Assembly (NCBI RefSeq): GCF_002571385.2
Contig: NW_019217849.1
Location: 109,975 to 173,974 of the forward strand
Source: Stylophora pistillata
Taxonomy: Eukaryota
Length of the DNA stretch: 64,000 nucleotides
Direction: 5' to 3'
The notes below the pieces were generated by a model. It was not told the DNA's origin and did not search any database. It was given only the letters and a program-made list of their open reading frames with translations. The translations under genes were made by a program, and so were the position numbers. Positions 41,594 through 42,820 of the stretch are shown in pieces; position 1 is the first letter of the stretch, and the number at the start of each line of letters is the position of its first letter.

Positions 41594-41872
41594 AATCTTC
41601 TACAATGAAAGGAACGTGAAACCGTCTGTCTGTGCTTCATGCAAATTCTTTAATATGAAAAGGTTACTTGAATTGTCACGCAAATGACCTTTTCAGAAAG
41701 GCCTTGATCAGCATGCATCCGCAAGGCGGGAGGTCAAAACAAAACTGACTCGTGACCAACAAATTGTCACGATGGACTAGGTAGAGGGTACATCCCCCAC
41801 GCTGAATTCAGCCAATAAAAGTGCATTTCTCTCTTAATTCTCTTCATTTTTATCGAGGATCGATAAAAAAAG
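41594..41872. promoter_or_regulatory. Bidirectional peptidase/fructokinase promoter
   Basis: 279 bp between divergent ATGs; aattgtcacg occurs twice (~41671 and ~41762); CCAAT at ~41812. Confidence 0.7.
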
Positions 41873-42820
41873 ATGAACTACATTGCCGGCGTGGAGCTCG
41901 GAGGCACTACATGTATTGCTGCAATTGCAGAGTTAAGCCAACCAACAAAGATTATTGAGAGTTTTGAAACAGACACCAAAGCCAAACCACTGGAGACGCT
42001 CTCAAGTTTGACGAAATTTCTCAGACAGAAGCTTGCGAGTCTGGGCATCAATTCATATGCAGCCGTCGGAATTGCGTCCTTTGGGCCTGTAGACCTGCGC
42101 AAGAGTTCCCTAACCTACGGCTTCATCACCACAACTCCAAAAGAACCTTGGAGAAATACTGATATTGTTGGCTTTTTCAAACAAGAATTCGGCGACACTA
42201 CTCCAATTGGGTTCGAAACGGATGTCAACGCACCTGCGATGGCTGAACTTGCGAAAATTGAACACGATCCCGCGGATACACCCACGGTGGTTTACATCAC
42301 TGTTGGAACTGGTGTCGGTGTTGGGGCTGTGGTGGGCGGGAAACCCATTCACGGGCTCCTCCATCTCGAGGGAGGACATATAATGGTACCTCCCATCCCT
42401 GGGGATAGCTACCCTGGGGGATGTAGTTTCAACCATGAGTATTGTATAGAGGGCATGGTGAACTCTAAAGCAATTGCAGCTAGAGCTGGGGTAAGCCAAA
42501 GGGAACTCCACACCCTGGCAGATGATCACGAGGTGTGGGAGAGGGCTGCCTACTACCTTGGAGTTCTGTGCCTAAACATTACATATCTGCTCTCTCCTCA
42601 CGTGATTGTCTTGGGAGGAGGAATCCTGAAGCGTAAGATACTTTTTGGCAAAGCAAGAAAATGGTTCAAGGATTTACTGAAAGGATATCTTGATGTGGAG
42701 AAATTCAAGTCAGAAGAAGGATTGGCAAGTTACATTAGAGAAAGTGTTTTTGGTGATTCAACTGGAATTATTGGTGCTTTAGAATTAGCCAGGAAAGAAG
42801 TGTCTAACAAGGAAAATTAA
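41873..42820 (+). CDS. Intronless ROK-family fructokinase (ScrK/YdhR type), 315 aa
   Basis: N-terminal GVELGGT, GIASFGPVDL..YGFITTTPK..W, TDVNAPA, YITVGTGVGVG, Zn-site H-x-E-G-G-H...CSFNHEYCIEG, and VIVLGGG. Single uninterrupted ORF; AATAAA at 43016. Confidence 0.92.
   Translation: MNYIAGVELGGTTCIAAIAELSQPTKIIESFETDTKAKPLETLSSLTKFLRQKLASLGINSYAAVGIASFGPVDLRKSSLTYGFITTTPKEPWRNTDIVGFFKQEFGDTTPIGFETDVNAPAMAELAKIEHDPADTPTVVYITVGTGVGVGAVVGGKPIHGLLHLEGGHIMVPPIPGDSYPGGCSFNHEYCIEGMVNSKAIAARAGVSQRELHTLADDHEVWERAAYYLGVLCLNITYLLSPHVIVLGGGILKRKILFGKARKWFKDLLKGYLDVEKFKSEEGLASYIRESVFGDSTGIIGALELARKEVSNKEN

What the first reader, a model, noticed from the sequence alone, without database searches (positions are those of the whole stretch)
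41594..42820. Bacterial-type ROK fructokinase, intronless, plugged into a host bidirectional promoter: candidate horizontally acquired sugar-kinase module
Seen: an intact 315-aa single-exon ORF with ATP, sugar and Zn-site motifs. It starts 279 bp from the ATG of an 11-exon gene, is followed by AATAAA and host repeats, and has no assembly gap nearby, so contamination is unlikely. Known: animals phosphorylate fructose with hexokinases or the PfkB-family ketohexokinase, whereas ROK fructokinases (ScrK, YdhR/GmuE) are typical of bacteria and some protists. Inference: a transfer from a bacterium or microbial eukaryote that captured an existing promoter. It could give the host a direct fructose/mannose-to-hexose-6-phosphate route relevant to symbiont- or diet-derived sugars.
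Basis: partly seen in the sequence, partly recalled or inferred. Interest (0 to 1): 0.85.

Follow-up and report, generated by a model that had tools for sequence, protein, structure and literature searches.

The report
Coral ROK fructokinase gene, alga-derived
This is a real, expressed, intron-less sugar-kinase gene of the coral Stylophora pistillata, shared by all anthozoans, whose closest relatives are red-algal rather than bacterial genes, and it was already published in 2016 as an ancient horizontal-transfer candidate.

Summary
A 315-aa single-exon ORF (41873-42820, +) encodes a complete ROK-family sugar kinase. Its closest solved relative, in sequence and predicted fold, is the Bacillus subtilis fructokinase YdhR. 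It lies 279 bp, ATG to ATG, head-to-head with a spliced Peptidase_S9 gene. It is single-copy, under purifying selection, and covered by colinear contigs in polyA RNA-seq runs from two studies.

The interpretation needs correction on three points.
- The gene is not coral-specific or recent. Single-exon orthologs occur in Hexacorallia and Octocorallia and reproduce that split.
- It is not directly bacterial. All sampled bacteria (at most 42% identity) fall outside a eukaryote-wide ROK fructokinase clade that includes red algae, oomycetes, amoebozoans, ichthyosporeans, Monosiga and bdelloid rotifers. Within that clade Anthozoa group with mesophilic red algae.
- It is not new. Bhattacharya et al. 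2016 (eLife, Table 1, row 17) list "rok family protein/fructokinase, Anthozoa, Red algae" as an HGT candidate, and GenBank names it "putative fructokinase".

Ancient acquisition from a red-algal lineage by the stem anthozoan is the best reading (about 0.6). Vertical descent with many losses is not excluded: Anthozoa+Ichthyosporea gives AU p=0.21. Substrate specificity is untested. The scan had not noted this gene before.

The parts
41873..42820 (+). Single-exon ORF, 315 aa plus stop: ROK-family sugar kinase (putative fructokinase)
41782..42905 (+). Minimal mRNA extent seen as colinear polyA-RNA contigs. One run's contig spans 41623-42999. No splice joint inside.
   Evidence: table 8 (records 17, 9, 4, 23-25) and table 5
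41894..41908 (+). Codons for E8-L-G-G-T12, the N-terminal phosphate-binding loop
   Evidence: E8, G10, G11 invariant and T12 at least 90% conserved. The role is inferred from ROK kinase structures (PMC10031466).
42218..42229 (+). Codons for T116-D117-V118-N119. D117 is the predicted catalytic base.
   Evidence: invariant; catalytic Asp of ROK kinases, shown by mutagenesis in NagK
42368..42445 (+). E166-G-G-H169 sugar-binding motif and zinc cluster H169/C184/H188/C191. It carries a one-residue insertion specific to hexacorals.
41616..41781 (.). About 166-bp spacer between the 5' ends of the two divergent transcripts: putative bidirectional promoter
   Evidence: the S9 contigs end at 41615 followed by adapter sequence; ROK contigs begin at 41782-41794 in three runs
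41482..41615 (-). Exon 1 of the Peptidase_S9 gene (ATG at 41593)
39445..41481 (-). Intron 1 of the S9 gene (GT..AG on the minus strand). RNA depth is zero at 40403-41404.
   Evidence: tables 2 and 5
32568..39444 (-). Exon 2 (39045-39444) and further exons of the S9 gene. Peptidase_S9 domain hits lie in 33381-33842 and 34575-34862.
42849..42854 (+). ATTAAA, the likely poly(A) signal. One RNA contig ends 17 nt later, at 42871.
43280..43352 (+). tRNA-like (Thr-AGT) element, probably the head of a tRNA-derived SINE: the 'host repeat' downstream

Best explanation
The ORF is a functional nuclear gene of Stylophora pistillata. It encodes a ROK-family ATP-dependent hexose kinase of the YdhR/ScrK fructokinase type. 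By homology it should phosphorylate fructose, and possibly mannose, at O6 to give the hexose 6-phosphate. Asp117 would act as catalytic base, E166/H169 and E193 would hold the sugar, and a structural zinc would be bound by H169/C184/H188/C191. The gene is transcribed unspliced from a compact divergent promoter shared with a Peptidase_S9 gene. It is the ortholog of a single-exon gene found throughout Anthozoa. It belongs to a eukaryote-wide ROK fructokinase clade and groups there with mesophilic red algae. The most likely history is one ancient eukaryote-to-eukaryote transfer into the stem anthozoan, followed by domestication. The donor would be a red alga or an alga carrying red-algal genes. 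Shown here: gene integrity, expression, constraint, distribution and tree position. Inferred: substrate, direction of transfer and promoter capture.
For: Family and fold: Pfam ROK E 3e-40. The best NCBIfam model is ScrK fructokinase. The best PDB sequence match is B. subtilis fructokinase 1XC3/3LM9, E 3e-51 over residues 4-309. The AF2 model has pLDDT 93.3, and its top fold matches are 1XC3/3LM9 at TM 0.87/0.93, against 0.62-0.77 for other ROK kinases. Catalytic and zinc residues are invariant or nearly so across 15 homologs.
Host gene: single copy in the 397.6-Mb genome. No gap lies within 17 kb, and GC3 is 0.44 against 0.40 for the neighbour's exons. The S9-ROK head-to-head pair is also present in Nematostella and in a second scleractinian.
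Expression: colinear contigs in 4 polyA RNA-seq runs from 2 studies. The adjacent intron has zero depth and the neighbour is correctly spliced.
Constraint: dN/dS 0.147 against an 84%-identical ortholog.
Phylogeny: bacteria and eukaryotes are split with support 100. Anthozoa 96, Hexacorallia 95, Octocorallia 100. The sister is P0041, then red algae at 85-90. Under LG+F+G4 the Anthozoa plus mesophilic red algae bipartition gets 92.6/97. A 371-sequence FastTree gives the same grouping. P0041 is a red alga, judged by its neighbouring PMM gene. The best bacterial hits are at most 42% identical, against 44-52% for non-cnidarian eukaryotes.
Published: PMC4878875 Table 1 row 17 reaches the same conclusion.
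Against: Backbone support inside the eukaryotic clade is moderate (SH-aLRT 81-92). The AU test does not reject Anthozoa as sister of Ichthyosporea (p=0.21). Absence from Medusozoa, sponges, ctenophores and placozoans rests only on their not appearing among named top hits; it was not searched genome by genome. An exhaustive HMMER search of 1.84 billion representatives supplied the top 150 clusters, which went into the 371-sequence tree; the unnamed members grouping with Anthozoa look red-algal (same-length contigs as PMM hits). The score against the curated ScrK equivalog model is 185 against a cutoff of 400, and no eukaryotic member has been assayed, so fructose specificity is unproven.
Confidence: 0.6

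Rival explanations
1. Vertical inheritance. A ROK fructokinase was present in early eukaryotes or the holozoan ancestor, was retained in Anthozoa (and ichthyosporeans), and was lost independently in most other animal lineages.
For: The family forms one eukaryote-wide clade distinct from bacteria. Homologs exist in Creolimax, Ichthyophonus and Monosiga. The AU test does not reject Anthozoa+Ichthyosporea (delta lnL 15.3, p=0.21).
Against: Three tree methods place Anthozoa with mesophilic red algae, not with holozoans. Monophyly of Anthozoa+Ichthyosporea+Monosiga+rotifers is rejected (delta lnL 100, p=5e-7). No named hit comes from sponges, ctenophores, placozoans, medusozoans or non-rotifer bilaterians, so at least five independent losses would be needed. 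Monosiga groups with Euglena-like sequences.
Confidence: 0.25
2. Direct transfer from a bacterium into corals, as the title 'bacterial-type' suggests.
For: ROK fructokinases are best known from bacteria. The closest solved structure and the best curated model are bacterial. The gene is intron-less.
Against: All 40 sampled bacterial sequences, the best of 597 hits in 185,579 species genomes, form one group apart from 67 eukaryotic ones with support 100 (99.9/100). Maximum bacterial identity is 42%, against up to 52% for protists and algae. Red-algal homologs are themselves single-exon on the contigs seen, so the lack of introns does not point to bacteria.
Confidence: 0.03
3. Contamination, assembly artefact, or a recent retrocopy of a spliced parent gene.
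For: Single exon; downstream poly(A) signals; repeats nearby.
Against: The gene is embedded between spliced host genes with no gap within 17 kb. The same gene with the same neighbour occurs in Nematostella and another coral. There is only one locus in the genome and no spliced paralog. Orthologs are single-exon in both anthozoan subclasses. Composition is host-like.
Confidence: 0.01

Closest known systems
Bacillus subtilis YdhR/GmuE ROK fructokinase (PDB 1XC3, 3LM9, 3OHR)
   Same: Full-length homology (E 3e-51, 35-38% identity) and the same fold (TM 0.87/0.93). The E-x-G-G-T loop, T-D-V-N-A catalytic motif and E-x-G-H motif are shared. The zinc site is the same His-Cys-His-Cys type, not the Cys-x-Cys-G-x-x-G-Cys type of ROK glucokinases.
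   Different: It is eukaryotic, belongs to a separate eukaryote-wide clade, and has a one-residue insertion between C184 and H188 in hexacorals. It is not in a sugar-utilisation operon. The substrate is untested.
Bacterial ScrK fructokinase (NCBIfam NF045550 equivalog)
   Same: Best-scoring curated family, end-to-end alignment (residues 3-308, model positions 4-289 of 293).
   Different: The score of 185.5 bits is far below the 400-bit equivalog cutoff, so it cannot be filed as ScrK.
Anthozoan 'rok family protein/fructokinase' HGT candidate of Bhattacharya et al. 2016 (eLife 5:e13288, Table 1 row 17, A. digitifera_7178)
   Same: Same gene family, same distribution (Anthozoa), and the same inferred source (red algae, support 93). 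My trees reproduce it.
   Different: This is the Stylophora ortholog. Added here: RNA evidence, conserved S9 head-to-head synteny in hexacorals, the wider eukaryotic distribution, and an AU test showing the vertical alternative is not fully excluded.
ManNAc kinase domain of animal GNE (the ROK domain animals normally have)
   Same: ROK fold with a structural zinc (PDB 2YHW/3EO3 appear among fold matches, TM about 0.65-0.72).
   Different: Only 17-19% identity. It is a different subfamily, fused to an epimerase, and acts on N-acetylmannosamine.

Membership tests
ROK family (Pfam PF00480) | Domain match above the curated gathering score over the whole domain | tested here: met
   139 bits against 22.9; residues 5-308 on model positions 2-293 of 294
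ROK family kinases | N-terminal acidic-x-G-G-T phosphate/metal loop | tested here: met
   E8-L-G-G-T12. E8, G10 and G11 are invariant in 15 homologs including bacterial ones. Glu replaces the Asp of NagK, as in YdhR.
ROK family kinases | Catalytic Asp in the D-x-N-A motif | tested here: met
   T116-D117-V118-N119-A120, with T116, D117, V118 and N119 invariant. The role is inferred from NagK D105 mutagenesis.
ROK family kinases | E-x-G-H sugar-binding motif followed by a structural zinc cluster | tested here: met
   E166-G-G-H169, then C184, H188 and C191 (H invariant, C at least 90% conserved). They align with the YdhR zinc loop. Metal binding itself was not tested.
ROK fructokinase subfamily (YdhR/ScrK type) | Closest sequence and fold relatives are characterised ROK fructokinases rather than glucokinases, NagK or NanK | tested here: met
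   1XC3/3LM9 E 3e-51, against 2e-15 for the best glucokinase. TM 0.87-0.93 against at most 0.80.
ScrK equivalog (NCBIfam NF045550) | Score at or above the curated 400-bit cutoff | tested here: not met
   185.5 bits
ROK fructokinase subfamily | ATP-dependent phosphorylation of fructose to fructose 6-phosphate | not testable with these tools
Horizontally acquired gene in an animal | Physically integrated in the host genome among host genes, and expressed | tested here: met
   Spliced S9 neighbour, conserved synteny, polyA RNA contigs
Horizontally acquired gene in an animal | Nested within or sister to a non-animal donor clade with strong support, with alternatives rejected | tested here: inconclusive
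   The red-algal grouping gets 85-97 support. Holozoa monophyly is rejected, but Anthozoa+Ichthyosporea is not (p=0.21).
Horizontally acquired gene in an animal | Absent from the other animal lineages | tested here: inconclusive
   No named hits from other animals except bdelloid rotifers, which form a separate clade. No genome-level searches of medusozoans, sponges, ctenophores or placozoans were possible.

The most novel reading that the evidence does not exclude
The anthozoan enzyme is a red-alga-derived fructo/mannokinase. In red algae its gene forms a conserved divergent pair with phosphomannomutase. In corals it would provide a dedicated, hexokinase-independent entry of free fructose or mannose (from diet, mucus or algal symbionts) into glycolysis or GDP-mannose synthesis. 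That capacity would be unique among animals and retained for more than 500 million years.
Probability: 0.2. Interest if true: 0.5.

Novelty: already known. Interest (0 to 1): 0.25.

Why it matters
The gene is a clean, well-supported example of a foreign-looking metabolic gene that has been a normal part of anthozoan genomes since before hexacorals and octocorals split. It shows that "bacterial-type" domains in animals can come from other eukaryotes. It also illustrates how patchy the eukaryotic ROK fructokinase family is. Because the gene is already annotated and already listed as an HGT candidate, the value of this check is mainly corrective: donor, age, and the caveat that vertical descent is not excluded. 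It also raises a testable point, since no eukaryotic member of this clade has been assayed.

Tried and rejected
- treekit AU test on the 107-taxon set did not finish in two 288-s runs. I replaced it with a 58-taxon IQ-TREE analysis under LG+F+G4. The planned third constraint (Anthozoa+rotifers alone) was not run for lack of time.
- Nocek et al. 2011 (PMC3365590), needed for the fructose-contacting residues of YdhR, is not held. Residue roles are therefore inferred from the NagK paper and from conservation.
- The Entamoeba fructokinase paper turned out to concern a ribokinase-family enzyme, not a ROK one. I used it only for its table of kinetic data on bacterial ROK fructokinases.
- A literature search for a characterised eukaryotic ROK fructokinase found none.
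- Retrocopy and contamination were considered and rejected.
- RNA depths were not used to rank expression, because all runs were contigs.

Full report
**Observation**

The window holds a 315-codon ORF at 41873-42820 on the plus strand. Residues 5-308 match the Pfam ROK domain end to end (139 bits, cutoff 22.9).

The best curated bacterial model is fructokinase ScrK. The score of 185 bits is far below its 400-bit equivalog cutoff.

The best solved relative is the Bacillus subtilis fructokinase YdhR (1XC3/3LM9/3OHR; E 3e-51, residues 4-309). The next-best relatives are ROK glucokinases, at E 2e-15 or worse.

An AlphaFold2 model built on a 15-sequence alignment has mean pLDDT 93.3. Its best PDB fold matches are the same two fructokinase entries (TM 0.87/0.93), against 0.62-0.80 for other ROK proteins.

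Conservation across 15 homologs from corals to bacteria:
- Invariant: E8, G10, G11, T116, D117, V118, N119, E125, T146, E166, H169, H188 and E193.
- At least 90% conserved: T12, C184 and C191.

By position these residues correspond to known ROK kinase elements (PMC10031466). The mapping is by motif, so it is an inference.
- the phosphate/metal loop;
- the catalytic Asp;
- the E-x-G-H sugar-binding motif;
- the structural zinc ligands.

The zinc loop is of the His-Cys-His-Cys type, as in YdhR. Hexacorals carry a one-residue insertion in it.

**Surroundings**

On the minus strand a gene starts with ATG at 41593, which leaves 279 nt between the two start codons. Its downstream coding blocks hit Peptidase_S9.

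PolyA RNA contigs join 41482 to 39444 across a 2037-nt GT..AG intron in all four runs laid.

The nearest run of N is 17 kb away.

A tRNA-like element lies downstream at 43280-43352. It has an inverted copy 600 nt further on and very deep, variant-rich RNA contigs, so it is probably a tRNA-derived SINE.

I could not confirm the neighbour's exon count of 11; I saw at least nine homologous coding blocks.

**Identity of the genome and annotation status**

The 90% cluster of the protein contains GenBank PFX29365.1, "putative fructokinase [Stylophora pistillata]".

That 286-aa model lacks residues 45-73, which include the conserved F-G-P-V-D stretch. The RNA contigs are colinear with the genome and show no such skip. 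The deposited model therefore carries a false intron, and the 315-aa single-exon reading is correct.

The gene is single-copy in the 397.6-Mb assembly, with no spliced paralog.

**Expression and constraint**

Four polyA RNA-seq runs from two studies hold contigs covering 41782-42905, 41794-42871, 41623-42999 and 41789-42812 without joints. The adjacent S9 intron (40403-41404) has zero depth in all four runs. The signal is therefore RNA and not contaminating DNA.

The S9 contigs end at 41615 followed by adapter sequence. The two transcripts therefore diverge from a spacer of about 166 bp. Contigs cannot fix ends precisely.

Against an 84%-identical ortholog from another scleractinian (L002), dN/dS is 0.147. 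GC3 is 0.44, close to the neighbour's exons at 0.40.

**Distribution**

Close homologs (60-84% identity) are unnamed or named scleractinian sequences such as Orbicella and Porites.

| Organism or group | Identity to the coral protein |
|---|---|
| Nematostella | 59% |
| Dendronephthya (octocoral) | 53% |
| Xenia (octocoral) | 49% |
| Red algae, oomycetes, Creolimax, a Cyanophora-like sequence, dictyostelids | 44-52% |

A search from Creolimax adds Ichthyophonus, Monosiga brevicollis, bdelloid rotifers, Balamuthia, Acytostelium and Euglena.

The best matches in one genome each of 185,579 bacterial and archaeal species reach only 35-42% identity.

**Synteny and gene structure**

In Nematostella the gene is single-exon. 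It lies head-to-head with a Peptidase_S9 gene whose first two exons match the window's (53-54% identity), though about 2.3 kb away.

Its other Nematostella neighbour is a WD40 gene that matches window 26467-27571 at 70-72% identity.

The second scleractinian (L002) has the same compact S9-ROK arrangement.

In both octocorals the gene is again single-exon and head-to-head. The partner there is a PDZ gene 0.4-0.6 kb away, with PEX13 downstream.

The gene has therefore been in anthozoan chromosomes since before the subclass split. It has been relocated at least once and sits at a divergent promoter in every case seen.

**Phylogeny**

*107 sequences, LG+C20+F+G4 PMSF, quick search.* The 40 bacterial sequences are separated from 67 eukaryotic ones with support 100. 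Anthozoa form a clade (96), split into Hexacorallia (95) and Octocorallia (100). Their sister is P0041 (90), followed by Rhodosorus, Porphyridium-type and florideophyte red algae (85). Ichthyosporeans, rotifers and Galdieria join at the next, unresolved level. Monosiga groups with Euglena and MMETSP sequences (95-96).

*58 sequences, LG+F+G4.* The bipartition of Anthozoa plus mesophilic red algae against everything else gets SH-aLRT 92.6 and UFBoot 97. Bacteria are monophyletic at 99.9/100.

*371 sequences, FastTree, including the 150 best 50%-identity cluster representatives of 1.84 billion proteins.* It gives the same order: Anthozoa, then P0041 (0.92), then red algae (0.81).

*Identity of P0041.* It lies on a compact 9-kb contig next to a phosphomannomutase gene. 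That PMM is closest to red-algal PMMs: Agarophyton 74%, Gracilariopsis 69%, Hildenbrandia 68%. P0041 is therefore a red alga.

*AU tests on the 58-taxon set.* Forcing Anthozoa+Ichthyosporea+Monosiga+rotifers together is rejected (delta lnL 100.1, p=4.8e-7). Forcing Anthozoa+Ichthyosporea alone is not rejected (delta lnL 15.3, p=0.21).

**Interpretation**

A direct bacterial origin is very unlikely. Contamination and retrocopy are excluded.

The most economical history is one acquisition from a red-algal lineage by the stem anthozoan. The donors' own genes are single-exon on the contigs seen, which explains the lack of introns without invoking bacteria.

This is exactly what Bhattacharya et al. 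[quoted passage not shown]

The alternative is an old eukaryotic or holozoan gene kept only in Anthozoa among non-rotifer animals. It needs many losses and is disfavoured by the ML trees, but the AU test leaves it open. I could not search medusozoan, sponge, ctenophore or placozoan genomes directly.

**Function**

Characterised bacterial ROK fructokinases make fructose 6-phosphate with Km about 0.3-0.8 mM, and several also accept mannose (Table 2 of PMC4412284).

All catalytic and structural positions are intact, the model is confident, and the gene is constrained and expressed. An active ATP-dependent fructo(manno)kinase is therefore the most likely function; I put it at about 0.8 for a hexose kinase and about 0.6 for fructose as the main substrate.

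The PMM-ROK divergent pair in two red algae hints at a link to mannose metabolism in the donor lineage.

No eukaryotic member appears to have been assayed.

**Verdict**

The finding is already known, both as an annotated gene and as a published HGT candidate.

New here:
- RNA support for the single-exon model;
- the conserved S9 head-to-head arrangement in hexacorals;
- the breadth of the eukaryotic clade;
- a statistical caveat on the vertical alternative.

Noticed in passing
L084:3742-5935 and L087:4478-7041: In two red algae (an unnamed one and Agarophyton chilense) the ROK fructokinase gene is head-to-head with phosphomannomutase.
   Followed up: partly
window 42005-42091 (codons 45-73 of the ORF): GenBank model PFX29365.1 (286 aa) removes 29 residues, including the conserved F-G-P-V-D motif, as a false intron. 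RNA contigs are colinear, so the 315-aa model is correct.
   Followed up: yes
window 43166-43400 and 43743-44001: tRNA-like (Thr-AGT) element with an inverted 74% copy 600 nt away. PolyA-RNA contig depths reach 10^5 with many variant joints. It is probably an abundant transcribed tRNA-derived SINE family.
   Followed up: partly
window 26467-27571 vs L001:10579-11809: The WD40 gene immediately downstream of ROK in Nematostella matches (70-72% identity) a gene 5 kb beyond the S9 gene in this window. This is a rearranged microsyntenic block of WD40, S9 and ROK.
   Followed up: partly
P0343, P0358, P0365, P0398, P0402: Bdelloid rotifers (Didymodactylos, Rotaria, Adineta) carry ROK fructokinases that form their own clade (99), away from Anthozoa. 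This looks like a separate acquisition.
   Followed up: partly
P0073, P0079: Two database proteins fuse the ROK fructokinase domain to a Methyltransf_16 (PF10294) domain. P0027, a 470-aa hexacoral-clade member, has a long extension.
   Followed up: no
L085:7657-10930 and L086:7805-10909: In octocorals the ROK gene is head-to-head with a PDZ-domain gene (0.4-0.6 kb apart) and followed by PEX13. The partner differs from hexacorals but the divergent layout is the same.
   Followed up: partly
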